Origin: Dendrobates tinctorius
Lineage: Eukaryota
Direction of reading: 5' to 3'
NCBI RefSeq assembly: GCF_039654945.1
Contig: NW_027361806.1
Coordinates: 21,824,001-21,888,000, forward strand
Length of the DNA stretch: 64,000 nucleotides
Shown: piece after piece, positions 5,540-63,283 of the stretch
How the letters are laid out: the number at the start of each line of letters is the position of its first letter
Numbering within the stretch: the first letter of the stretch is position 1
The notes under the pieces: model-generated
The model's input: the letters and a program-made list of their open reading frames with translations, nothing else
Database searches by the model: none
What the model was told of the DNA's origin: nothing
Program-made: the position numbers and the translations under genes

Positions 5540-8100
5540 CCATACAGAATGAGCCCCATGTAATGCTCCATACAGAATAATGTGCCCCATATAATGCTCC
5601 ATACAGTATAATGAGCCCCATATATTGCTCCATACAGAATAATGACCCCCATATATTGCTCCATACAGACTAATGAGCCCAATATATTGCTCCATACAGA
5701 ATAATGATCCCCTCTATAATGCTCCAAACAGAATAATGAGCCCCATGTAATGCTCCATACAGAATAATGAGCTTCATATATTGCTCCCTACAGAATAATG
5801 AGCCTCATATTGCTCCATATGTCCTGGGCCTGTCCTGGGCCCTGTATTGTTCAACATCTTTATCAACGATTTAGATGAAGGAATTGAGGGTAAACTGATT
5901 AAATTTGCTGATGACACAAAGCTAGGAGGGATAGCTAATACTAGAGAAGAGAGAGAGAGGATTCAAAAAGATTTAAATAAACTGGAGAAGTGGGCAGCAA
6001 CTAACAGAATGGTTTTTAACAGGGAGAAATGCAAAGTACTACATCTGGGCAATAAAAATGAAAAAAGCATATATAGAATGGGAGGAATAGGGCTAAGTGA
6101 CAGCACATGTGAAAAAGACTTGGGTATACTAATAGATCACAGACTGAATATGAGTCAACAGTGTGATGCAGCAGCAAAAAAGGCAAATGCAATTCTTGGA
6201 TGTATTAACAGAAGCATACAGTCTAGATCACGTGAAGTCATTATTTCCCTCTACTCCTCTTTGGTCAGACCTCATCTGGAATATTGTGTCCAGTTTTGGG
6301 CACCACATTTTAAAAAAGACATCAACAAACTGGAGCAAGTTCAGAAAAGAGCGACCAGAATGGTGACCGGTCTGCAAACCCTGTCTTATGAGGAAAGGTT
6401 GCAGGATTTGGGAATGTTTAGTTTGCAAAAGAGAAGACTGAGAGGAGACTTAATAGCTGTCTACAAATATCTAAAGGGCTGTCACATTGTAGAAGGATCA
6501 ACTTTATTCTCATTTGCACAAGGAAAGACTAGAAGCAATGGGATGAAACTGAATGGGAAGAGACACAGATTAGATATTAGAAAAAACTTTTTGACAGTTA
6601 GAGTGATCAATGAGTGGAACAGGCTGCCACGAGAAGTGGTGAGTTCTCCTTCAATGGAAGTCTTCAAACAGAGGCTGGACAGACATCTGACTGGGATGAT
6701 TTAGCGAATCCTGCTTTGAGCAGGGGGTTGGACCAGATGGCCCAGGAGGTCCCTTCCAACTCTACGATTCTATGATTCCATACAAAATAATGAGCCCCAT
6801 ATATTGCGCCATACAGAATGAACACTATATATTGCTCCATATAGATTAATGAGCCCCATATATTGCTCCACACAGAATGAGCACCATATATTGCTCCACA
6901 CAGAATAATGAGCCTCATACTGTATATTGCTCCACACAGAATAATGAGCCCCATATAATGCTCCATACAGAATAATGAGCCCCATATAATGCTCCATACA
7001 GAATAATGAGCTTCATATATTGCTCCATACAGAATAATGAGCCCCATATAATGCTCCATACAGAATAATGAGCACCATATATTGCTCCCTACAGAATAAT
7101 GAGCCTCATATTGCTCCATACAAAATAATGAGCCCCATATATTGCTCCATACAGAATAATGAGCACCATATATTGCTCCATACAGATTAATGAGCCCCAT
7201 ATATTGCTCCACACAGAATCAGCACCATATATTGCTCCACACAGAATAATGAGCCTCATACTGTATACTGCTCCACACAGAATAATGAGCCCCATATAAT
7301 GCTCCATACAGAATAATGAGCCCCATATAATGCTCCATACAGAATAATGAGCCTCATATATTGCTCCATACAGAATAATGAGCCCCATATAATGCTCCAT
7401 ACAGAATAATGAGCAGCATATATTGCTCCACACAGAATAATGAGCCTCATATATTGCTCCATACAGAATAATGAGCCTCATATATTGCTCCACACAGAAT
7501 GTTGAGCCCCATATAATGCTCCACACAGAATAATGAGCCCATAATTTGCTCCATACAGAATGAGCCTCATATATTTCTCCACACAGAATAATGAGCTCCA
7601 TATATTGCTCCACACAGAATAATGAGCCCCATATAATTCTCCATACAGAATAATGAGCCTCCATATATTGCTCCATACAGAATGAGCCCCATATATTGCT
7701 CCATACATAATAATGAGCCCCATATATTGCTCCATACAGTATAATGAGCTCCATATTTTGCGCCACACAGAATAATGAGCCCCATATAATGCTCCAAACA
7801 GAATAATGAGCCTCCATATATTGCTCCATACAGAATGAGCCCCATATATTGCTCCATACATAATGAGCCCCATATAATGCTCCATACAGAATAATGTGCC
7901 CTATATATTGCTCCATACAGAATAATGAGCTTCATATATTGCTCCATACAGAATAATGAGCCCCATATATTGCTCCATACAGAATAATGAGCTTCATATA
8001 TTGCTCCACACAGAATAATGAGCCCCTTATAATGGGCCCCATATAATGGGCCCCATATAGTGCTCAATTCAGTATAATGAGGCCAATATAGTGCTCCATA
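5540..8100. repeat. Minisatellite of about 29-33 bp units (CCATACAGAATAATGAGCCCCATATATTGCT), interrupted by a CR1
   Basis: Direct tandem repeats at 5540-5820 and 6779-8100; source of the MEQYMGLII-type artefact ORFs. Confidence 0.95.
5821..6778 (+). mobile_element. CR1 LINE 3' fragment (RT C-terminus plus 3'UTR), reading frame still open at 5847-6704
   Basis: [14 protein letters not shown]...[10 protein letters not shown]...[17 protein letters not shown]. The 3' end is GGTTGGACCAGATG...GGTCCCTTCCAACTCTACGATTCTATGATTC. Confidence 0.95.
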
Positions 8101-18589: not shown

Positions 18590-20660
18590 TCTGTATGTGG
18601 AGAGCTCCCACAAGTGGTGGCTGCAGACAGAATATTATCATGTATCTCTGTATACAGGGAGCTCCCCCTAGTGGTGGCTGCAGACAGAATATTATCATGT
18701 ATCTCTGTATACAGGGAGCTCCCACAAGTGGTGGCTGCAGACAGAATATTATCATGTATCTCTGTACACAGGGAGCTCCCCCTAGTGGTGGCTGCAGACA
18801 GAATCTTATCATGTATCTCTGTATACAGGGAGCTCCCCCTAGTGGTGGCTGCATACAGCATCTTATGTGTCTCTGTATATAGGGAGCTCCTCCTAGTGGT
18901 GGCTGCAGACAGGATCTCATCATGTATCTCTGTATACACGGAGCTCTCCCTAGTGGTGACTGCAGACAGAATATTATCATGTATCTCTGTATACATGGAG
19001 CTCCCCCTAGTGGTGGCTGCAGACAGAATCTCATCATGTATCTCTGTATACACGGAGCTCTCCCTAGTGGTGGCTGCAGACAGGATCTCATCATGTATCT
19101 CTGTATACAGGGAGCTCCCCCTAGTGGTGGCCGCAGACAGGATCTCATCATGTATCTCTGTATACAGGGAGCTCCCCCTAGTGGTGGCTGCAGACAGGAT
19201 CTTATCATGTATCTCTGTATACATGGAGCTGCCCTAGTGGTGGCTGCCTACAGGATCTTATCATGTATCTCTGTATACAGGGAGCTCCCCCTAGTGGTGG
19301 CTGCAGACAGGAGCTTATCATGTATCGCTGTATACAGGGAGCTCCCCCTAGTGGTGGCTGCAGACAGAATCTTATCAAGTATTTCTTTATACAGGGAGCT
19401 CCCCCTAGTGGTGGCTGCAGACAGGCTCTCATCATGTATCTCTGTATACAGGGAGCTCCCCCTAGTGATGACTGCAGACAGGATGTTATCATGTATCTGT
19501 ATACAGGGAGCTCCCCCTAGTGGTGGCTGCCTACAGGATCTTATCATGTATCTCTGTATACAAGGAACTCCCCTTAGTGGTGACTGCAGACAGGATCTCA
19601 TCATGTATCTCTGCATACGGGGAGCTCCCCCTAGTGGTGGCTGCAGACAGGATCTTATAATGTATCTCTGTATACAGGGAGCTCCCCCTAGTGGTGGCTG
19701 CATACAGCATCTTATGTGTCTCTGTATACAGGGAGCTCCCCCTAGTGGTGGCTGCAGACAGAATCTCATCATGTATCTCTGTATATAGGGAGCTCCCCCT
19801 AGTGGTGGCTGCAGACAGGATCGTATCATGTATCTCTGTATACACGGAGCTCTCCCTAGTGGTGGCTGCAGACAGGATCTCATCATGTATCTCTGTATAC
19901 AGGGAGCTCCCCCTAGTGGTGGCCGCAGACAGGATCTCATCATGTATCTCTGTATACAGGGAGCTCCCCCTAGTGGTGGCTGCAGACAGGATCTTATCAT
20001 GTATCTCTGTATACATGGAGCTCCCCTAGTGGTGGCTGCCTACAGGATCTTATCATGTATCTCTGTATACAGGGAGCTCCCCCTAGTGGTGGCTGCAGAC
20101 AGGAGCTTATCATGTATCGCTGTATACAGGGAGCTCCCCCTAGTGGTGGCTGCAGACAGAATCTTATCAAGTATTTCTTTATACAGGGAGCTCCCCCTAG
20201 TGGTGGCTGCAGACAGGCTCTCATCATGTATCTCTGTATACAGGGAGCTCCCCCTAGTGATGACTGCAGACAGGATGTTATCATGTATCTCTGTATACAG
20301 GGAGCTCCCCCTAGAGGTGGCTGCCTACAGGATCTTATCATGTATCTCTGCATACAGAGAGCTCCCCCTAGTGGTGACTGCAGACAGGATCTCATCATGT
20401 ATCTCTACATACAGGGAGCTCCCCCTAGTGGTGGCTGCAGACAGGATCTTATCATGTATCTCTGTATACAGGGAGCTCCCACTAATGGTGGCTGCAGACA
20501 GGATCTTATCATGTATCTCTGTATACAGGGAGCTCCCCCTAGTGGTGACTGCAGACAGGATCGTATCTCTGTATACAGGGAGCTCCCCTAGTGGTGACTG
20601 CAGACAGGATCTTATCATGTATCTCTGTATACAGGAGCTCCCCCTAGTGGTAGCTGCAGA
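18590..20660. repeat. 57-bp minisatellite (about 36 units), each carrying a CTCF-like motif
   Basis: Unit GGGAGCTCCCCCTAGTGGTGGCTGCAGACAGGATCTTATCATGTATCTCTGTATACA, with a 792-bp higher-order duplication. Confidence 0.97.
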
Positions 20661-20873
20661 TAGTAACTAGATGCCTTTTCATCACTGGCGCCATATCAGT
20701 TGAATAGCAGTAGCTACACCATGACTATCTGTTTGGAGGCCACATAATCAGCATGGAGTCTCCTGAACAGGCCATGAATCTGTTAAAAAAAAAAGCTCAG
20801 TAAATGAAAGGAGCACCATATTTTGTTGTTACAATTGGTGAGGGTCACAACGACAGTCCTCCAATCCCTCAGA

Positions 20874-23800
20874 TTATTATTATTATTATTATTATTATTT
20901 ATTGTTATAGCGCCATTTATTCCATGGCGCTTTACATGTGAGGGGGGTATACATAAAAACAAGTACAATAATCTTAAACAATACAAGTCATAACTGGTAC
21001 AGGAGGAGAGAGGACCCTGCCCGCGAGGGCTCACAATCTTCAAGGGATGGGTGATAATACAGTAGGCGAGGGAAGAGCTGGTCGTGCAGCGGTTTGGTCG
21101 ATCGGTGGTTACTGCAGGTTATAGGCTTGTCGGAAGAGGTGGGTCTTCAGGCTCTTTTTGAAGGTTTCGATGGTAGGTGAGAGTCTGATATGTTGTGGTA
21201 GAGAGTTCCAGAGTAGGGGTGATGCGCGAGAGAAATCTTGTATGCGATTGTGGGAAGAGGAGATAAGAGGGGAGTAGAGAAGGAGATCTTGTGAGGATCG
21301 GAGGTTGCGTGCAGGAAAGTACCGGGAGACGAGGTCACAGATGTATGGAGGAGACAAGTTGTGGATGGCTTTGTATGTCATGGTTAGGGTTTTGTAATGG
21401 AGTCTCTGGGCAATTGGGAGCCAGTGAAGGGATTGACAGAGGGGAGAAGCTGGGGAATAGCGGGGGGACAGGTGGATTAGTCGGGCAGCAGAGTTTAGAA
21501 TAGATTGGAGGGGTGCGAGAGTGTTTGAGGGGAGGCCGCAGAGCATGAGGTTGCAGTAGTCAAGGCGAGAGATGATGAGGGCATGGACTAGGGTTTTTGC
21601 AGATTCTTGGGTGAGGAATGAACGGATGCGTGAAATATTTTTGAGTTGAAGTCGGCAGGAAGTGGAAAGGGTTTGGATATGTGGTTTGAAGGAGAGATCA
21701 GCATCAAGGATTACTCCGAGGCAGCGAGCTTGTGGGACTGGGGAGAGTGGGCAGTCATTTACTGTAATTGATAGGTTCGTAGGGGGGGTCACGTGAGATG
21801 GGGGAAAGATGATGAATTCTGTTTTGTCCATGTTGAGTTTCAGATATCTAGTGGAGAAGAAGGATGAAATAGTGGACAGACATTGAGGGATTCTGGTTAG
21901 TAGGGAGGTGATATCTGGTCCAGAGATGTAGATCTGTGTGTCATCAGCATAAAGATGATACTGAAAGCCATGAGATTCTATGAGCTGTCCCAGGCCAAAG
22001 GTGTAAATAGAGAACAGCAGGGGCCCTAGGACTGAACCTTGTGGGACTCCGACAGATAGGGGGCGAGGTGAGGAGGTGGTGTGTGAGTGGGAGACGCTGA
22101 ATGTCCGGTCTGTTAGGTATGATGAGATCCAGGAGAGGGCCAAGTCTGTGATGCTGAGGGATGAGAGGGTCTGTAATAATAGGGAATGGTCCACTGTGTC
22201 AAAGGCAGCCGACAGGTCCAGGAGGAGGAGGACAGAGTAGTGTCGCTTGCTCTTGGCAGTTAAGAGGTCATTGGTGACCTTAGTAAGGGCAGTTTCAGTG
22301 GAGTGGTGTGACCGGAAGCCAGATTGTAAGCGGTCGAAGAGGGAGCAAGAAGAGAGATGGGAGGACAGTTCAAGGTAGACGTGTTGTTCCAGTAGCTTGG
22401 AGGCGTATGGGAGAAGTGATATAGGGCGATAGCTAGATACAGAGGATGGGTCAAGAGAGGGCTTTTTGAGGATAGGTGTGATGGAGGCATGTTTAAAGCT
22501 TGAGGGGAAAACACCAGTTGTTAGTGATAGGTTGAAGAGATGGGTTAGGGTTGGGATGAAGACTGTGGTGAGGTTTGGGATGAAGTGGGATGGGATCGGG
22601 TCGAGTGCACAGGTGGTGAGATGTGATCTTGAGAGTAGAGTGGAGAGTCGATCTTCTGTCATGGTGGAGAAGTTGGTTTTGAAGGTGGAGGGCTGGGAAG
22701 TCGGGAGGAAGGGCTCTGGGGGTTGTTGACCAAAACTGTCCCTGATGTTATCAATTTTCTGCTTGAAAAATGAGGCAAAGTCTTCAGCTGAGATGAGTGG
22801 GGAGGGAGGAGGTGCTGGGGGGCGGAGGAGAGAATTGAAGGTGTTGAATAACTGTTTAGGGTTGTGAGACAGGGAGGATATGAGAGATGAGAAGTAGGTT
22901 TGTTTAGCTGTGGCGAGTGTGGTCTTGAAAGTAGTGAGGGACTGTTTGAATGCGATGAAATGCTCGTTGGAGTGGGATCTTTTCCATCTGCGCTCAGCAG
23001 CCCTGGAAGCTCGCCTCAGCTCTTTGGTCAGGCTGGTGTGCCAGGGCTGTCTGTTGATTTTGCGAGTTTTGGTATGTGTAAGTGGGGCAGCGGATTCCAA
23101 AGCTACAGCTATTGTGGTGTTATATAGAGCGGCAGCGTCATCCGCATTGTGTAAGGAACTTATATCTGTAAGAGGGAGGAGGGATTCGGAGAATGAGTGT
23201 AGGTCAAGGTGTTTAAGATTCCTGCGAGGGTGTGAAAGTTTGTGGGGTGGGGATTGTAGACATGGAGTGAAGAGGGAAGAGAATGTGAGCAGGTTGTGGT
23301 CAGAGAGAGGAAGAGGTGAGTTAGAGAGGTTAGATAGGGAGCAGAGGCGGGTGAAGATGAGGTCCAGTGTGTGGCCATCTTTGTGGGTGGCTGTAGAAGA
23401 CCATTGAGTGAGGCCGAAGGAGGAAGTGAGAGATAGAAGTTTAGTGGCAGCTGAGAGGGAAGTGTCAATGGGGATGTTGAAGTCGCCCATGATGATAGTA
23501 GGGATGTCCGCGGAAAGGAAATGAAGTAACCAGGTGGTGAAGTGGTCAAAGAAGGTGGTGGCTGGCCCTGGGGGGCGGTAGATGACAGCCAGTTGGAGGT
23601 TGGAGGGGGAGTAGATGCGCACAGAGTGCACCTCAAAGGAAGGGAGGGTAACAGAGGGTGGCAGTGGGATTGGGGTGAAGGAGCAGGTATCTGACAGGAG
23701 AAAACCAACTCCTCCACCAAGTTTGCTGCTGGGGCGGGGGGTGTGAGAAAGGTGGAAGCCGCCATACGAAAGTGCAGCAGGAGAGGCTGTGTCAGAAGGG

Positions 23801-24482
23801 GTGAGCCAGGTTTCGGTGATGGCGAGGAAGGAGAGTTTGGTAGTAACAAAAAGATCATAGATGTAGGAAAGCTTGTTGCAGACAGAGCGAGCGTTCCACA
23901 GAGCTCCTGTTAGTGGGACTGGGGAAGCGGGGGCTGGGTGAATGGGTATAAGGTTGGAGAGGTTACGGAAGGTTGTGATAGAGCGTGGATGGGAGGTAGA
24001 AATGACTGTGGGAATGTGGTGAGGAGGACCAGGATTTGGAGAGATATCACCAGCAGTGAGAAGGAGCAGAGAAAGTGTTAGCAGGTGGGAGCAGGAGAGG
24101 GCATGAGGGGGCTGTCTGTGTTTGGAGACAGAGGATTGTATGTTAAGGAACAGTTTTGAGGCGGAGGTGAGGTGGATGGGGAGGATTGAAGAAGAGATGA
24201 ACAGTTCCTTACTAGGAGTAGGGATTAGGGGAATTAGCAGAAAGTGAAGGATTATTGGGGTGAAAGTGAAAACAAACAGAAACATTGTTTACAGTGACTG
24301 TGTCCAGTTACCTTCAGTTCCCTTCTGGTTCAATTCTGGTTTTAATTCTTAAATTAATCTTCACACTTCTAGCACACACTTATAGCAATCACAATGCAGA
24401 CTGAAGTCTATGCAGACTTGTACTCTGCAATATATGTACAACTAAGTGCAGTCAGGTGTGAAGCAGAGAGGAGTGGTCTCTG
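20874..24482 (-). mobile_element. Apparently full-length L2-clade LINE with a single ORF
   Basis: Intact ORF and a 5'UTR of about 200 bp. The 3'UTR has the stem-loop GCGCCAT-GGAATAA-ATGGCGC and a (TAA)n tail. Candidate TSD CTCAGA at 20868-20873 and 24483-24488. Confidence 0.9.
21109..24285 (-). CDS. L2 LINE polyprotein (1058 aa): hydrophobic leader, 2A-like peptide, APE endonuclease, reverse transcriptase
   Basis: APE motifs WNARS, ITETWL, IYRPP, MGDFN, GHTLDL, LSDH; RT motifs [35 protein letters not shown]. No stops. Confidence 0.93.
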
Positions 24483-24864
24483 CTCAGACATGGATTCCTT
24501 TTATTGTACCTGACTTTACTTTAGTCTTTGATAAGTCTTTCTTTTAGCTGATAAAGGATATTTCTGATGAATGTCTTATAAAAAAAACTGTTAAACTTTT
24601 GGACAGAATATTCTAGTTGCCGTAGCAACTACAAAATGATATAAACGTTCGGGAAAATGGACTTTCTCTGCTCAGATTTGACAGAAAATGGATTTTTTTC
24701 CTTGTTAATGTTAGAAAGGAGGGGCGGTAGCTTTGTAAATAAATGTGAATTTGGTTTGGAAGATTACTGAATATCCGAACTAAAATCACTTGGACCCTCA
24801 CAGATCTGATACTGATGACATATCCTTGGAAAAGGTCATCAATAACAGTAAAGGAGCAAAATTA

Positions 24865-25127
24865 GGGCAGCACGGTGGCTCAGTGGTTAGTTAGTGGTTC
24901 GAATCCCACCAAGGACAACATCTGCAAGGAGTTTGTATGTTCTCCCCGTGTTTGCGTGGGTTTCCTCCGGGTACTCCGGTTTCCTCCCACATTCCAAAGA
25001 CACACTGATAGGGAATGTAGATTGTGAGCCCCATCGGGGGGCAGTGATGAAAATGTGTGCAAACTGTAAAGCGCTGCGGAATATGTTAGCGCTATATAAA
25101 AAAAATAAAAATAAAGATTATTATTAT
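24865..25127 (+). mobile_element. V-SINE, second copy, with a deletion in the tRNA head
   Basis: Near-identical to 15612-15917 but lacks the segment between the A and B boxes. Confidence 0.9.
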
Positions 25128-25188
25128 CACTCATAGAAGCAGATATACATGAACTGTACGAGTGCAAGACAAGGAGCAAGTACACCCT

Positions 25189-25466
25189 GAGCCATGTACA
25201 GGGTCCGCCCCCCCCGAGCCACATACAGGGTCCGCCCCCCCCGAGCCACATACAGGGTCCGCCCCCCCCGAGCCACATACAGGGTCCACCCCCCCGAGCC
25301 ACATACAGGGTCCACCCCCCCCGAGCCACATACAGGGTCCGCCCCCCCCGAGCCACATACAGGGTCCACCCCCCCCGAGCCACATACAGGGTCCACCCCC
25401 CCCCGAGCCGCATACAGGGTCCACCCCCCCCCCGAGCCACATACAGGGTCCGCTCCCCGAGCCACG
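25189..25466. repeat. C-rich minisatellite of about 30 bp (GAGCCACATACAGGGTCC(A/G)CCCCCCC), about 9 units
   Basis: Direct tandem repeats with variable C-run length. Confidence 0.9.
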
Positions 25467-28238: not shown

Positions 28239-46330
<18,092 letters not shown>

Positions 46331-49021: not shown

Positions 49022-51996
49022 CCCGGCTGTCATTATGGAGGCTCGGTCACTGTGGCTGTCATTATGAAGGCTCAGTCACTGTGGGGAGCAACCTGGTCAT
49101 TATGGAGCCTCAATCACTGAAAGAGGCACTCTGGCTGTCATTATGGAGGCTCGGGCACTGTGGGGGCACCCTGGCTGTCATTAATGAGGCTCAGTCACTG
49201 TGGGGGCTCCCTGGCTGTCATTAATGAGGCTCAGTCACTGTGGGGGCTCCCTGGCTGTCATTAATGAGGCTCGGTCACTGTGGGGGCTCCCTGGCTGTCA
49301 TTAATGAGGCTCGGTCACTGTGGGGGCTCCCTGGCTGTCATTAATGAGGCGCGGTCACTGTGGGGGCTCCCTGGCTGTCATTAATGAGGCTCGGTCACTG
49401 TGGGGGCTCCCTGGCTGTCATTATGGAGGCTCGGTCACTGTGGGGGCAGCCCGGCTGTCATTATGGAGGCTCGGTCACTGTGGGGGCAGCCCGGCTGTCA
49501 TTATGGAGGCTCGGTCACTGTGGGGGCACCGTGGCTGTCATTATGGAGGCTCTGTTACTGTGGGGGCACCCCGGCTGTCATTATGGAGGCTCAGTCACTG
49601 TTGGGGCACCGTGGCTATCATTATTGAGGCTCAGTCACTGTGGGGGCATCCCGGCTATCATTATGGAGGCTCAGTCACTGTAGGGGCACCGTGGCTATCA
49701 TTATGGAGGCTCAGTCACTGTAGGGGCACCGTGGCTATCATTATTGAGGCTCAGTCACTGTGGGGGCATCCCGGCTGTGATTATTGAGGTTCAGTCACTG
49801 TGGGGGCACCTTGGCTATCATTGTGGAGGCTCAGTCACTGTGGGGGCACCCCGGCTGTCATTATGGAGGCTCGATCACTGTTGGGGCCAGCCCTGCTGTC
49901 ATTATTGAGGCTCAGTCACTGTGGGGGCACCTCGGCTGTCATTATGGAGGCTCAGTCACTGTGGGGGCATCCCGGCTGTGATTATTGAGGTTCAGTCACT
50001 GTGGGGGCACCTTGGCTGTCATTGTAGAGGCTCAGTCACTGTGGGGGCACCCCGGCTGTCATTATGGAGGCTCGATCACTGTGGGGGCATCCCGGCTGTC
50101 ATTAATGAGGCTCAGTCACTGTGGGGGCATCCCGGCTGTCATTATTGAGGCTCGGTCACTGTGGGGGCTCTCTGGCTGTAATTATTGAGGCTCGGTCACT
50201 GTGGGGGCTCCCTGGCTGTCATTAATGAGGCTCGGTCACTGTGGGGGCTCCCTGGCTGTCATTAATGAGGCTCGGTCACTGTGGGGGCTCCCTGGCTGTC
50301 ATTAATGAGGCTCAGTCACTGTGGGGGCTCCCTGGCTGTCATTAATGAGGCTCAGTCACTGTGGGGGCTCCCTGGCTGTCATTAATGAGGCTCAGTCACT
50401 GTGGGGGCTCCCTGGCTGTCATTAATGAGGCTCAGTCACTGTGGGGGCTCCCTGGCTGTCATTAATGAGGCTCGGTCACTGTGGGGGCTCCCTGGCTGTC
50501 ATTAATGAGGCTCGGTCACTGTGGGGGCTCCCTGGCTGTCATTAATGAGGCTCGGTCACTGTGGGGGCTCCCTGGCTGTCATTAATGAGGCTCGGTCACT
50601 GTGGGGGCTCCCTGGCTGTCATTAATGAGGCTCGGTCACTGTGGGGGCTCCCTGGCTGTCATTAATGAGGCTCGGTCACTGTGGGGGCTCCCTGGCTGTC
50701 ATTAATGAGGCTCGGTCACTGTGGGGGCTCCCTGGCTGTCATTAATGAGGCTCGGTCACTGTGGGGGCTCCCTGGCTGTCATTAATGAGGCTCGGTCACT
50801 GTGGGGGCTCCCTGGCTGTCATTAATGAGGCTCGGTCACTGTGGGGGCTCCCTGGCTGTCATTATGGAGGCTCGGTCACTGTGGGGGCACCGTGGCTGTC
50901 ATTATGGAGGCTCTGTTACTGTGGGGGCACCCCGGCTGTCATTATGGAGGCTCGGTCACTGTGGGGGCTCCCCGCCTGTCATTATGGAGGCTCGGTCACT
51001 GTGGGGGCACCTCGGCTGTCATTATGGAGGCTCTGTTACTGTGGGGGCACCCCGGCTGTCATTATGGAGGCTCGGTCACTGTGGGGGCACCCCGGCTGTC
51101 ATTATGGAGGCTCGGTCACTGTGGGGGCTCCCCGCCTGTCATTATGGAGGCTCGGTCACTGTGGGGGCACCTCGGCTGTCATTATGGAGGCTCTGTTACT
51201 GTGGGGGCACCCCGGCTGTCATTATGGAGGCTCGGTCACTGTGGGGGCACCTCGCCTGTCATTATGGAGGCTCGGTCACTGTGGGGGCACCTCGCCTGTC
51301 ATTATGGAGGCTCTGTTACTGTGGGGGCACCCCGGCTGTCATTATGGAGGCTCTGTTACTGTGGGGGCACCCCGGCTGTCATTATGGAGGCTCAGTCACT
51401 GTGGGGGCTCCCCGCCTGTCATTATGGAGGCTCAGACACGGTGGGGGCACCCCGGCTGTCATTATGGAGGCTCGGTCACTGTGGGGGCACCCCGGCTGTC
51501 ATTATGGAGGCTCGGTCACTGTGGGGGCACCTCGCCTGTCATTATGGAGGCTCTGTTACTGTGGGGGCACCCCGGCTGTCATTATGGAGGCTCTGTTACT
51601 GTGGGGGAACCCCGGCTGTCATTATGGAGGCTCAGTCACTGTGGGGGCTCCCCGCCTGTCATTATGGAGGCTCAGACACGGTGGGGGCACCCCGGCTGTC
51701 ATTATGGAGGCTCGGTCACTGTGGGGGCACCCCGGCTGTCATTATGGAGGCTCGGTCACTGTGGGGGCACCTCGCCTGTCATTATGGAGGCTCTGTTACT
51801 GTGGGGGCACCCCGGCTGTCATTATGGAGGCTCTGTTACTGTGGGGGAACCCCGGCTGTCATTATGGAGGCTCAGTCACTGTGGGGGCTCCCCGCCTGTC
51901 ATTATGGAGGCTCAGACACGGTGGGGGCACCCCGGCTGTCATTATGGAGGCTCGGTCACTGTGGGGGCACCCCGTCTGTGATTATGGAGGCTCAGT
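49022..51996. repeat. 40-bp G-rich minisatellite (about 74 units) immediately upstream of the rabggtb promoter
   Basis: Unit GTGGGGGCACCCCGGCTGTCATTATGGAGGCTCGGTCACT, with a homogenised block at about 50180-50840 and a 240-bp higher-order repeat at the 3' end. Confidence 0.97.
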
Positions 51997-52355
51997 CTCC
52001 CTGGTTGATCATGGGTGTGACCGGATCATCATTTTAGGGTCACTGAATTGAGGATAGCAGGTATTCTATGACACTTCTATTTATGTGGCAATCATTCATG
52101 ATACAGCAGGACAGGCATCACACAAGACACCCCTAATAAGTCCCTGCTAGGACCGGGCAAGTGATGACAGACGGGGGCCTCTCTGAGGGGAGCTGTCCTC
52201 GCACTGCCGGCGCTGATCACGTGCGCCGCGGCCAGTATAGCTCCACAGTGTGCGCGGACAGGCAGCGGGCGGACGCCTATGTCACCTTCCTCCAATCCAC
52301 GTGCAGCAGCGGGGTCCTGGCTAGCAGTGACTGAAAAGCTCCGCCCAGGCCGGAG

Positions 52356-62070: not shown

Positions 62071-63283
62071 CACTCACTGGCCACTTTATTAGGTACACCA
62101 TGCTAGTAAGGGGTTGGACCCCCTTTTGCCTTCAGAACTGCCTCAATTCTTCGTGGCAGAGATTCAACAAGGTGCTGGAAGCATTCCTTAGAGATTTTGG
62201 ACCATATTGACATGATGGCATCACACAGTTGGCGCAGATTTGTCGGCTGCACATCCCTGATGCGAATCTCCCGTTCCACCACATCCCAAAGATGCTCTAT
62301 TGGATTGAGATCTGGTGACTGAGGAGGCCATTTGAGTACAGTAAACTCATTGTCATGTTCAAGAAACCAATCTGAGATGATTCGAGCTTTATGACATGGC
62401 GCATTATCCTGCTGAAAGTAGCCATCAGATGTTGGGTACATTGTGGTCATAAAGGGATGGACATGGTCAGCAACAATACTCAGGTAGGCTGTGGCGTTGC
62501 AACGATGCTCAATTGGTACCAAGGGGCCCAAAGAGTGCGCAGAAAAAATTCCCCACACCATGACACCACCACCACCAGCCTGAACCGTTGATACAAGGCA
62601 GGATGGATCCATGCTTTCATGTTGTTTACGCCAAATTCTGACCCTACCATCCGAATGTCGCAGCAGAAATCGAGACTCATCAGACCAGGCAACGTTTTTC
62701 CAATCTTCTACTGTCCAATTTCGATGAGCTTGTGCAAATTGTAGCCTCAGTTTCCTGTTCTTAGCTGAGAGGAGTGGTACCCAGTGTGGTCTTCTGCTGC
62801 TGTAGCCCATCTGCCTCAAAGTTCGACGCACTGTGCGTTCAGAGATGCTCTTCTGCCTACCTTGGTTGTAACGGGTGGCAATTTGAGTCACTGTTGCCTT
62901 TCTATCAGCTCGAACCAGTCTGCCCATTCTCCTCTGACCTCTGGCATCAACATGGCATTTCCGGCCACAGAACTGCCGCTCACTGGATTTTTTTTCTTTT
63001 TCGGACCATTCTCTGTAAACCCTAGAGATGGTTGTGCGTGAAAATCCCAGTAGATCAGCAGTTTCTGAAATTCTCAGACCAGCCCTTCTGGCACCAACAA
63101 TCATGCCACGTTCAAAGGCGCTCAAATCACCTTTCTTCCCCATACTGATGCTCGGTTTGAACTGCAGGAGATTGTCTTGACCATGTCTACATGCCTAAAT
63201 GCACTGAGTTGCCGCCATGTGATTGGCTGATTAGAAATTAAGTCTTAACACACAGTTGGACAGGTGTACCTAATAAAGTGGCC
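62071..63283 (-). mobile_element. Tc1/mariner DD36E (Incomer-type) transposon, about 1.2 kb with short TIRs
   Basis: TIR CACTCACTGGCCACTTTATTAGGTACACC within (TA)n; the other TIR is truncated at 63283; intact transposase ORF. Confidence 0.93.
62103..63143 (-). CDS. DD36E Tc1 transposase, 346 aa, intact
   Basis: Paired-like HTH, WSDESRF, and FQQDNAPCH...SPDLNPIE with 36 residues between D2 and E. Confidence 0.92.

What the first reader, a model, noticed from the sequence alone, without database searches (positions are those of the whole stretch)
24025..24285. 2A-like ribosome-skipping peptide behind a hydrophobic leader in an intact single-ORF L2 LINE
Seen: residues 58-87 are [29 protein letters not shown]|P, just before the APE domain. 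They follow a signal-peptide-like N-terminus ([20 protein letters not shown]). Known: picornaviral 2A has the pattern helix-D(V/I)ExNPG|P, and 2A-like sequences occur in APE-type non-LTR elements. Here Ser replaces the conserved Glu. Inference: an element lacking ORF1 may use StopGo recoding to make an 86-aa membrane or secreted peptide plus a free APE-RT, with skip efficiency controlling ER targeting versus retrotransposition.
Basis: partly seen in the sequence, partly recalled or inferred. Interest (0 to 1): 0.7.

Follow-up and report, generated by a model that had tools for sequence, protein, structure and literature searches.

The report
Frog L2 LINE with 2A-like leader
A young, intact jumping gene (single-ORF L2-type LINE) in a poison-frog genome starts its protein with a greasy signal-like tip and a virus-like "ribosome-skipping" (2A/StopGo) motif. 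The kind is already published, but here the motif carries Ser instead of the canonical Glu and is strongly conserved, so it is probably functional.

Summary
Window 21109-24285(-) is an intact 1058-aa APE+RT ORF. Its first 87 residues hold a very hydrophobic N-terminus (aa 2-21), a variable spacer, a Leu-rich helix and GDISPNPG|P (aa 79-87).

The element is full length, about 3.6 kb. It has a 201-nt 5'UTR without upstream AUG, no ORF1 and an (AAT)n tail. It belongs to a hugely abundant, recently active family.

The motif is not chance. Relatives down to about 36% APE identity keep LLLL-(A/S)-G-D-(I/V)-(S/A)-x-NPGP about 90 aa from the start. Ser or Ala, not Glu, is the family norm (29 of 43 unique peptides). 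The 2A segment has dN/dS 0.06-0.11, as constrained as the endonuclease. The hydrophobic N-terminus also recurs: 22 of 31 motif-bearing relatives against 13 of 65 without the motif.

The kind is known. Odon et al. 2013 described 2A-like sequences in single-ORF L2/CR1/Rex1 LINEs, including a frog. Roulston 2016 described signal/2A dual targeting. A 2026 preprint found "Class X" core variants with Ser or Ala active at 39-74%. Two Glu-to-Ser LINE variants tested in 2013 were inactive, so skipping here is inferred, not shown.

The conserved signal-like tip with a fixed ~90-aa leader appears undescribed, and the ER-targeting idea remains speculative. First readers noted the same feature on at least nine other pieces of this genome.

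The parts
20873..24486 (-). Full-length single-ORF LINE, about 3.6 kb
   Evidence: Family contigs from four runs cover 20800-24498 and drop to zero beyond about 24486-24498. Depth rises 5' to 3', the usual sign of 5' truncation. The 3' end is an (AAT)n tail. Only one copy lies in the window.
24286..24486 (-). 5'UTR, 201 nt, with no upstream AUG
   Evidence: The stretch has zero ATG, which only 1.7% of shuffles reach. There is an A at -3 of the start codon and an in-frame TAA two codons upstream. The 5' boundary comes from contig ends at 24486 and is good to about 5 nt.
21109..24285 (-). Intact ORF of 1058 aa (leader, APE, RT)
24223..24282 (-). Hydrophobic, signal-peptide-like N-terminus (aa 2-21)
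   Evidence: This is the highest hydropathy in the protein. The property is kept in Ranitomeya, L004 and Bombina copies and in 22 of 31 motif-bearing relatives. pN is below pS, with omega 0.24-0.33.
24100..24222 (-). Variable spacer of the leader (aa 22-62)
   Evidence: The sequence is poorly conserved but the length is kept. Leaders from Met to Gly have a median of 91 aa.
24052..24099 (-). Leu-rich upstream context of the 2A-like site (aa 63-78, [16 protein letters not shown])
   Evidence: Leu sits at -11 to -14 from the skip site. In the family, 28-39 of 43 unique peptides have Leu (or Leu/Ile) at the corresponding four columns. This matches the Leu enrichment reported for active eukaryotic 2A-like peptides.
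24025..24051 (-). 2A-like core GDISPNPG|P (aa 79-87). The predicted skip lies between Gly86 (24028-24030) and Pro87 (24025-24027).
   Evidence: Codons 63-87 show pN 0.058 against pS 0.39-0.53.
23902..24024 (-). Pro/Ser-rich linker between the 2A-like site and APE (aa 88-128)
23296..23901 (-). APE endonuclease domain (aa 129-330)
   Evidence: Pfam PF03372, E = 1.4e-09
21739..22467 (-). Reverse transcriptase domain (aa 607-849), with YADD at 779
   Evidence: Pfam PF00078, E = 2.6e-36; motif check
20873..21108 (-). 3'UTR ending in an (AAT)n microsatellite tail (20873-20908)

Best explanation
This is a full-length, recently active, single-ORF L2-type LINE of a dendrobatid frog. Its ORF opens with an 86-aa leader that ends in a functional but non-canonical StopGo/2A-like site, [14 protein letters not shown]|P, with Ser where viruses have Glu.

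Proposed mechanism. Translation starts at the first AUG of the transcript. When Gly86 is in the P site and Pro87 in the A site, the Leu-rich nascent helix and the GD-I-x-x-NPG turn in the exit tunnel slow peptide-bond formation. In a fraction of rounds the 86-aa leader is released and the ribosome carries on. This yields APE-RT beginning at Pro87, free of the hydrophobic leader. In the remaining rounds the ribosome reads through or the stall lowers output. The site would thus set the dose and the N-terminus of the endonuclease/RT in an element that has no ORF1.

What is shown and what is inferred. Shown here: the anatomy, the start codon, family-wide conservation and purifying selection. Inferred: the skipping itself and its efficiency. 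The conserved signal-like N-terminus is real as a sequence property; its role is open (see the novel case).
For: Anatomy.

Start codon: it is the first AUG of a 201-nt UTR, has A at -3, and has in-frame stops 2-17 codons upstream in five copies.

Conservation of the motif: it recurs at the same place in 31 of 120 and 22 of about 140 further relatives. Among 43 unique peptides, G11 and D12 appear in 35 and I/V13 in 37. NPGP is invariant only because the set was selected on it.

Selection: dN/dS of codons 63-87 is 0.06-0.11, against 0.11-0.17 for APE, with plenty of synonymous change. Ser/Ala at the Glu position is held across two deep, well-supported clades.

Family activity: the family is very abundant, and 6,769 of 37,639 laid contig pieces are at least 99% alike.

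Literature: 2A-like sites 40-80 aa into ORF2 of single-ORF L2/CR1/Rex1/Ingi LINEs, several of them active (PMC3708506). Natural core variants with Ser or Ala at this position gave 39-74% separation in HEK293T (bioRxiv 10.64898/2026.09.24.754024). Leu enrichment at -13 to -10 marks active eukaryotic 2A-like peptides (bioRxiv 10.64898/2026.06.17.732966).
Against: No assay exists for this peptide: exact-motif searches of papers found nothing and no supplementary tables were held.

Two natural Glu-to-Ser LINE peptides (L2A-1_NVe, Crack-3_NVe) were inactive in reticulocyte lysate. In F2A and P2A scans no substitution of E14 except E14H kept activity above 0.6. In RNA viruses this position is almost only Glu, and Glu14 contacts 28S rRNA in the cryo-EM structure.

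Many retrotransposon 2A-like peptides lower protein abundance rather than separate cleanly. An upstream signal sequence can inhibit the 2A reaction (PMC2978324). Transcription of this copy was not shown.
Confidence: 0.6

Rival explanations
1. The site is a conserved stalling or attenuator element without useful separation. The Leu-rich NPGP peptide stalls ribosomes and triggers quality control, keeping ORF2p scarce (the 'reduction' phenotype). The released leader has no role.
For: 59% of ORF2p-associated 2A-like peptides tested fell in a reduced-abundance class, linked to Leu-rich upstream regions. Odon et al. and Luke et al. proposed down-regulation of ORF2 as the role of 2A in ORF1-less LINEs. 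Ser at p14 should weaken separation.
Against: This does not explain why a hydrophobic N-terminus and a leader length of about 90 aa are also kept. Natural Ser/Ala cores can separate at 39-74%.
Confidence: 0.2
2. There is no recoding. The two hydrophobic stretches act as a signal or anchor plus a stop-transfer segment, so the APE-RT protein is made as an ER or nuclear-envelope-tethered membrane protein. NPGP would merely be a helix cap or turn.
For: The two most hydrophobic segments of the protein both lie in the leader. L2-clade ORF1p esterase binds phospholipids, which suggests membranes matter in retrotransposition (PMC3905857).
Against: The conserved residues are exactly those needed for StopGo (G, D, I/V, N, P, G, P plus a Leu helix), not those of a membrane span. 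The second stretch is short for a span: KD is 1.49 over 19 aa and it contains Ser, His and Thr. A tethered RT of over 100 kDa would have poor access to chromatin.
Confidence: 0.08
3. The motif is a decayed relic or chance motif. The leader would be junk translated from a T/C-rich 5' region and the motif would no longer do anything.
For: The coding strand is strongly G-poor, which gives long open frames in several registers and many Leu, Ser, Phe and Pro codons. Glu-to-Ser variants were called inactive relics in 2013.
Against: The pattern appears in 0 of 100 shuffles. pN is 0.058 against pS 0.39-0.53 in the 2A segment, and pN is below pS in the rest of the leader. The motif is conserved across frogs and distant aquatic relatives. 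The start codon is conserved, with stops just upstream and no uAUG.
Confidence: 0.04

Closest known systems
2A-like sequences in single-ORF APE-type non-LTR retrotransposons (L2, CR1, Rex1, Crack, Ingi/L1Tc clades; Odon et al. 2013, PMC3708506; Heras et al. 2006)
   Same: The 2A-like peptide sits in the N-terminal part of the APE-RT ORF, upstream of APE. ORF1 is absent. The L2 clade there includes a frog (X. tropicalis). Substitutions at the Glu position are frequent in LINEs.
   Different: Here Ser/Ala at that position is the conserved family norm under strong purifying selection, not a sporadic defect. A separate hydrophobic, signal-like N-terminus and a leader of about 90 aa are conserved too. 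The papers read do not mention either ('signal' and 'hydrophobic' occur 0 times in PMC3708506).
'Class X' 2A-like peptides with one substitution in the (G/H)D(I/V)ExNPGP core (bioRxiv 10.64898/2026.09.24.754024)
   Same: GDISPNPGP differs from the core at one position. Natural peptides with S21 or A21 were active at 39-74%. Class X peptides occur in non-LTR-like elements, including in samples from amphibians.
   Different: Whether this exact peptide or family was assayed could not be checked. Most Class X peptides were inactive in that screen.
Sea-urchin NLR N-terminal 2A-like signal sequences (Roulston et al. 2016, PMC4981915)
   Same: A hydrophobic targeting sequence is combined with StopGo.
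   Different: There a single 26-aa peptide is both signal and 2A, at the extreme N-terminus of a host immune protein. Here the hydrophobic tip and the 2A-like site are about 60 aa apart, in a transposon.
Picornavirus 2A (FMDV F2A, P2A) StopGo
   Same: It shares G-D-(V/I)-x-x-N-P-G|P with a hydrophobic or Leu-rich helix upstream. The presumed mechanism in the exit tunnel is the same.
   Different: Glu14, which contacts 28S rRNA and is almost invariant in viruses, is Ser here. The Leu run is longer.
XBP1u arrest peptide plus hydrophobic region HR2 (PMC4456659, PMC6624018)
   Same: This is a works-like analogue only: a hydrophobic nascent segment plus a downstream translational pause brings the ribosome-mRNA complex to Sec61 via SRP.
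   Different: There is no sequence relation. XBP1u does not release the chain and restart. The role here is hypothetical.

Membership tests
Canonical (class A) StopGo/2A peptide | C-terminal N-P-G|P | tested here: met
   N84-P85-G86-P87
Canonical (class A) StopGo/2A peptide | Core D(V/I)ExNPGP with Glu at p14 | tested here: not met
   The core is D80-I81-S82-P83, with Ser in place of Glu. The family norm is S 24, A 5 and E 3 of 43 unique peptides.
Canonical (class A) StopGo/2A peptide | Suitable hydrophobic or helical upstream context (about -19 to -10) | tested here: met
   Leu sits at -11 to -14, -16, -18 and -19. In the family, 28-39 of 43 unique peptides have Leu (or Leu/Ile) at the four central columns.
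Canonical (class A) StopGo/2A peptide | Demonstrated co-translational separation at Gly|Pro | not testable with these tools
   This needs a reporter assay. No published assay of this peptide was found.
Class X 2A-like peptide (one core substitution) | Matches (G/H)D(I/V)ExNPGP except at one conserved position | tested here: met
   GDISPNPGP differs only at p14
2A-bearing single-ORF APE-type non-LTR retrotransposon (Odon 2013) | [quoted passage not shown] | tested here: met
   The site is at aa 63-87 and APE at 129-330
2A-bearing single-ORF APE-type non-LTR retrotransposon (Odon 2013) | No ORF1 | tested here: met
   The element's 5' end is at about 24486, leaving only a 201-nt UTR before the ORF. 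The relative L002 is a 3738-nt contig with a single ORF.
L2 clade of LINEs | RT domain groups with reference L2 elements in a phylogeny | not tested
   No named reference sequences were available. Relatives include a platypus RT protein (P0109) and many frog and fish elements, which is a lead only.
L2 clade of LINEs | APE+RT ORF2 without RNase H, and a 3' end with a short tandem-repeat tail | tested here: met
   Pfam finds only APE and RVT_1. The tail is (AAT)n.
Cleavable ER signal peptide | N-terminal h-region of 7-15 or more hydrophobic residues | tested here: met
   aa 3-21 score KD 2.35. 22 of 31 motif-bearing relatives reach at least 2.0, against 13 of 65 without the motif.
Cleavable ER signal peptide | Positively charged n-region and small residues at -3/-1 of a cleavage site | tested here: inconclusive
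   The frog copy has no basic residue before the h-region, and only a Pro-rich TPS follows it. Distant relatives show textbook SFA|H, SIA|H, ALA|Y and AVA|H. No SignalP-type predictor was available.
Cleavable ER signal peptide | SRP-dependent targeting or translocation shown | not testable with these tools
   This needs microsome or cell assays.
2A-like signal sequence (Roulston 2016) | One N-terminal peptide of about 26 aa is both signal and 2A | tested here: not met
   The hydrophobic tip (aa 2-21) and the 2A-like site (aa 63-87) are separate.

The most novel reading that the evidence does not exclude
The leader is a co-translational mRNA-localising device. The signal-like tip emerges from the ribosome just as the 2A-like site, about 90 aa in, pauses elongation. 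From own knowledge, this is the length of classic SRP-targeting intermediates such as the 86-residue preprolactin nascent chain. SRP would then dock the ribosome and LINE mRNA on the ER or nuclear envelope, as XBP1u does with its own mRNA. StopGo then discards the leader into the translocon, and APE-RT is made signal-free at the membrane surface next to its own RNA. This would replace the membrane- and lipid-binding role proposed for L2 ORF1p esterase in an element that has lost ORF1. The weak Ser/Ala core would tune the pause and the split between productive (skipped) and dead-end (translocated) ORF2p.
Probability: 0.22. Interest if true: 0.8.

Novelty: new variant of a known kind. Interest (0 to 1): 0.45.

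Why it matters
2A-like sites in LINEs have been known since 2006 and 2013, but their purpose is still open, and variants lacking the Glu were written off as dead. This frog family is very abundant and recently active. It shows that a Ser/Ala-core version is kept by strong purifying selection over deep divergence, always about 90 residues behind a signal-like hydrophobic tip.

That gives three things. First, a natural test case for how far the StopGo core can drift and still work. Second, a possible new small, Leu-rich 2A variant for biotechnology. Third, a concrete, testable link between ORF1-less LINEs, translational pausing and membranes. If the peptide turns out to be inactive, the conservation would point to an unknown function for NPGP-type peptides.

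Tried and rejected
Searches that found nothing:
- Word-indexed protein search on the leader alone (aa 1-128): 564 candidates, none at E <= 0.01.
- ESM Atlas feature search on the leader: best score 0.88, below the useful range.
- Rfam at gathering threshold on the whole window: no hit.
- Exact-motif search of the paper library ([17 protein letters not shown] and others): no paper.
- Supplementary tables of the three screening papers are not held, so I could not see whether this peptide was assayed.
- P0005 could not be traced to DNA.

Expression is inconclusive. No run is on record as RNA. Several small contig sets guessed to be RNA, in two species, hold the 5' region. Contigs cannot show transcription or a start site.

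Readings considered and rejected:
- The hydrophobic tip as an artefact of extending the ORF into a T-rich UTR. M1 is the first AUG, has A at -3, has stops just upstream in five copies, and pN is below pS.
- A nucleotide-level (promoter) constraint on the leader. Synonymous divergence is high, pS 0.4-0.9.
- A relic motif.

Other open points:
- A target-site duplication could not be settled; CTGAG occurs at both ends but the boundary is ambiguous.
- About 20% of 2A-less relatives also open with a hydrophobic stretch, often followed by a second Met. The contrast is therefore real but not absolute, and it is not corrected for relatedness.

Full report
**1. What is in the sequence**

The minus strand of window 21109-24285 carries one intact ORF of 1058 aa. 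Pfam finds an APE-type endonuclease at aa 129-330 and a reverse transcriptase at aa 607-849. The catalytic motifs TETW, GDFN, SDH and YADD are all present.

They start [20 protein letters not shown], and residues 58-87 read [30 protein letters not shown]. A degenerate DNA pattern for D-I-x-x-N-P-G-P matches once in the 64 kb, at 24026-24048(-), and in none of 100 shuffles. The two most hydrophobic stretches of the whole protein both lie in the leader: aa 3-21 (Kyte-Doolittle 2.35 over 19 aa) and aa 62-76. The motif is 41 residues upstream of the APE domain, not directly against it.

**2. The element**

Closest proteins are from dendrobatid frogs, 95-97% identical to Ranitomeya imitator and Dendrobates tinctorius models. 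Other anurans follow: Gastrophryne, Phyllobates and Leptobrachium.

I laid contigs of four public runs on 20800-24900.
- The family is extremely abundant: 37,639 pieces in one 2-Gb DNA run, of which 6,769 are at least 99% alike.
- Depth rises about tenfold from 5' to 3', as expected for 5'-truncated LINE copies.
- Coverage ends abruptly at about 24486.

The element therefore runs from about 24486 to the (AAT)n tail at 20873-20908. That is about 3.6 kb with a 201-nt 5'UTR and no room for an ORF1.

The UTR contains no AUG, which only 1.7% of shuffles reach, and the start codon has A at -3. A distant full-length relative (L002, a 3738-nt contig) likewise has a 432-nt UTR without any AUG, followed by a single ORF. 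In five copies from different sources an in-frame stop lies 2-17 codons upstream of the shared Met. M1 is therefore the real start, and the leader is translated whenever the ORF is.

Only one copy lies in this window. The L2 label is plausible (APE+RT only, a microsatellite tail, frog, fish and platypus relatives), but I could not test it against reference sequences.

**3. Is the motif more than chance?**

Yes, on four grounds.

- Recurrence. Among the first 120 homologues, 31 carry x-NPGP, and nearly all of these have it in a Leu-rich GD(I/V)-x-x-NPGP context. Among about 140 further cluster representatives, another 22 do.
- Residue profile. Over 43 unique 25-mers, G11 and D12 occur in 35 and I/V13 in 37. 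Leu fills 28-39 of 43 at the four positions that correspond to -11 to -14 from the skip site. The canonical Glu position is Ser in 24, Ala in 5 and Glu in only 3. NPGP itself is invariant only because the set was selected on it.
- Codon-level selection. I compared frog copies for which DNA could be fetched: a Ranitomeya copy (L001, 91% identical in DNA to the window element), copy L004 (66% identical in protein over aa 1-330), and a third frog copy, L003. In codons 63-87, pN is 0.058 against pS 0.39-0.53, giving omega 0.06-0.11. That is as low as or lower than the APE domain (0.11-0.17). The hydrophobic tip and spacer evolve faster (omega about 0.24-0.36) but still with pN below pS. High synonymous divergence argues against a DNA-level constraint.
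- Phylogeny. A maximum-likelihood tree of the post-motif region places Ser/Ala-core peptides in two deep, well-supported clades: a frog clade (100/100) and an 'aquatic' clade of metagenome-derived elements (95/93). Ser and Ala swap repeatedly, and Glu is confined to three rows.

A small residue at p14 is thus an old, maintained state, not recent decay.

**4. The hydrophobic tip**

Sequence is not conserved but the property is. Examples:
- Ranitomeya: MFRFLFTFTPILLYFFLSPVV
- L004: MFTYALTVFAPLLLTLL
- L003 (frog): MLNIFIIIFATSCLY
- Distant relatives: MNLLWVSCLFFLSVSFA|HRH, MAPKFFIVAFFFILSIA|HRD, MRVLLLSTLFILTIALA|YRE and MFLLSGLILTALFFVAVA|HRD. These look like textbook signal peptides, with small residues at -3 and -1.

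Among Met-initiated relatives with the motif at aa 55-130, 22 of 31 have an N-terminal hydropathy window of at least 2.0. Most of the nine exceptions are evident chimeric gene models. Among relatives without the motif the figure is 13 of 65 (Fisher p = 2e-6, not corrected for relatedness).

Leader length from Met to Gly is tightly grouped, with a median of 91 aa and most between 86 and 98. I had no signal-peptide predictor. The frog copy lacks a basic n-region and has a long, Pro-interrupted h-region, so whether it is a signal, an anchor or neither remains open.

**5. What is known**

- Odon et al. 2013 (PMC3708506) reported 2A-like sequences 40-80 aa into ORF2 of non-LTR elements of the Rex1, Crack, L2, L2A, CR1 and Ingi clades, including L2 of Xenopus tropicalis. 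They noted the link with loss of ORF1 and frequent substitutions at the Glu. They found E-to-Q/D/N variants weakly active but E-to-H/A very weak, and two E-to-S peptides (L2A-1_NVe, Crack-3_NVe) inactive in reticulocyte lysate.
- Deep mutational scans of F2A and P2A tolerate nothing at E14 except E14H.
- In RNA viruses p14 is almost only Glu, and it contacts 28S rRNA.
- The same 2026 preprint that ran those scans tested natural 'Class X' peptides with one core substitution. It found A21 and S21 versions active at 74% and 39% in HEK293T, and found such peptides in non-LTR-like elements, including in amphibian samples.
- A second 2026 preprint links Leu at -13 to -10 with active eukaryotic peptides. 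It reports that most ORF2p-associated ones lower protein abundance.
- Roulston et al. 2016 showed signal/2A dual targeting for sea-urchin NLRs.
- de Felipe et al. 2010 showed that translocation of an upstream signal-bearing protein can inhibit the 2A reaction.

None of the papers I read mentions a hydrophobic or signal-like tip upstream of LINE 2A-like sites.

**6. Most likely mechanism**

The conserved residues are precisely those StopGo needs, apart from Glu14, and they sit behind a stronger than usual Leu helix. I therefore think the site still pauses the ribosome at Gly86/Pro87. In a fraction of rounds it would release the 86-aa leader, so that APE-RT starts at Pro87 (confidence about 0.6 for measurable separation). 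This would set ORF2p dose and free it from the hydrophobic leader in an ORF1-less element.

Rivals:
- A stall-only attenuator (0.2).
- A membrane-tethered ORF2p without recoding (0.08).
- A dead relic (0.04), which the selection data largely exclude.

**7. Speculative extension**

The fixed leader of about 90 aa means the tip is fully exposed when the ribosome reaches the pause. This resembles XBP1u, which uses a hydrophobic segment plus an arrest peptide to bring its own mRNA to Sec61 through SRP. L2 ORF1p esterase binds phospholipids, and its authors proposed a role for membranes in retrotransposition. A leader that docks the LINE mRNA at the ER and is then discarded by StopGo could replace that role. 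This is inference only (probability about 0.2).

**8. Verdict**

It is a new variant of a known kind, not a new kind.

The added value over the literature is threefold. The Ser/Ala core is the selected norm of a large, old and currently active family. A signal-like tip is conserved. Leader length is conserved. First readers of this scan noted the same feature on at least nine other pieces of this genome. Those are unchecked notes, consistent with the high copy number seen.

Noticed in passing
window 19500-20660: A 57-bp tandem array of at least 20.6 copies at 89% match lies about 200 bp beyond the 3' tail of the LINE. It may continue below 19500, which was the limit of the scan.
   Followed up: no
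window 49054-51997: A 40-bp satellite array of 73.6 copies at 92% match explains the GC-rich block (GC 0.61) and the long repeat-derived ORFs at 50761-52051.
   Followed up: partly
window 62103-63143 (-): A 346-aa ORF carries Tc1/mariner transposase domains (HTH_Tnp_Tc3_2, DDE_3, HTH_23) and may be an intact DNA transposon.
   Followed up: partly
window 5847-6704 (+) and 30854-31090 (-): There are further reverse-transcriptase fragments: a partial RVT_1 hit, and a 32% tblastn match to the L2 RT. These are other, decayed retroelements.
   Followed up: no
window 23160-23858 (-), alternative frame inside the L2 ORF: A 232-aa ORF in another frame of the same strand matches the start of an annotated Dendrobates tinctorius protein (P0099). 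It is probably a mis-annotated off-frame reading made possible by the G-poor coding strand (GC skew 0.53), not an overlapping gene.
   Followed up: no
window 25185-25465 and about 24880-24960 (-): Just upstream of the LINE 5' end lie a 27-bp tandem array (10.4 copies) and a tRNA-like, SINE-looking stretch. Neither gives an Rfam hit at gathering threshold.
   Followed up: no
relatives P0062, P0070, P0075, P0078, P0213, P0228: Some 2A-less relatives also begin with a signal-like hydrophobic stretch, ahead of a conserved 'Y-S/T-R-x-x-L ... HRG-x-R-x-G' N-terminal domain, often with a second Met just before that domain. A hydrophobic leader may be more widespread in this LINE group than the 2A-like site.
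   Followed up: partly
relatives P0047, P0048, P0050, P0058, P0103, P0179: A distinct sub-clade (100/99 support) carries a different conserved pre-NPGP core, (L/I)-(V/I)-GDLVFKLNPGP. Two extra residues lie between GD and NPGP, so it falls outside every published core definition I read.
   Followed up: no
relatives P0041-P0046, P0069, P0185: The 'aquatic' sub-family keeps Cys pairs (F-x-C-x-x-C and V-C-C-N-R-K/R) and an LLPLP motif in the leader spacer. This hints at a folded or disulfide- or zinc-bound mini-domain in the released peptide. The feature is absent from the frog copies.
   Followed up: no
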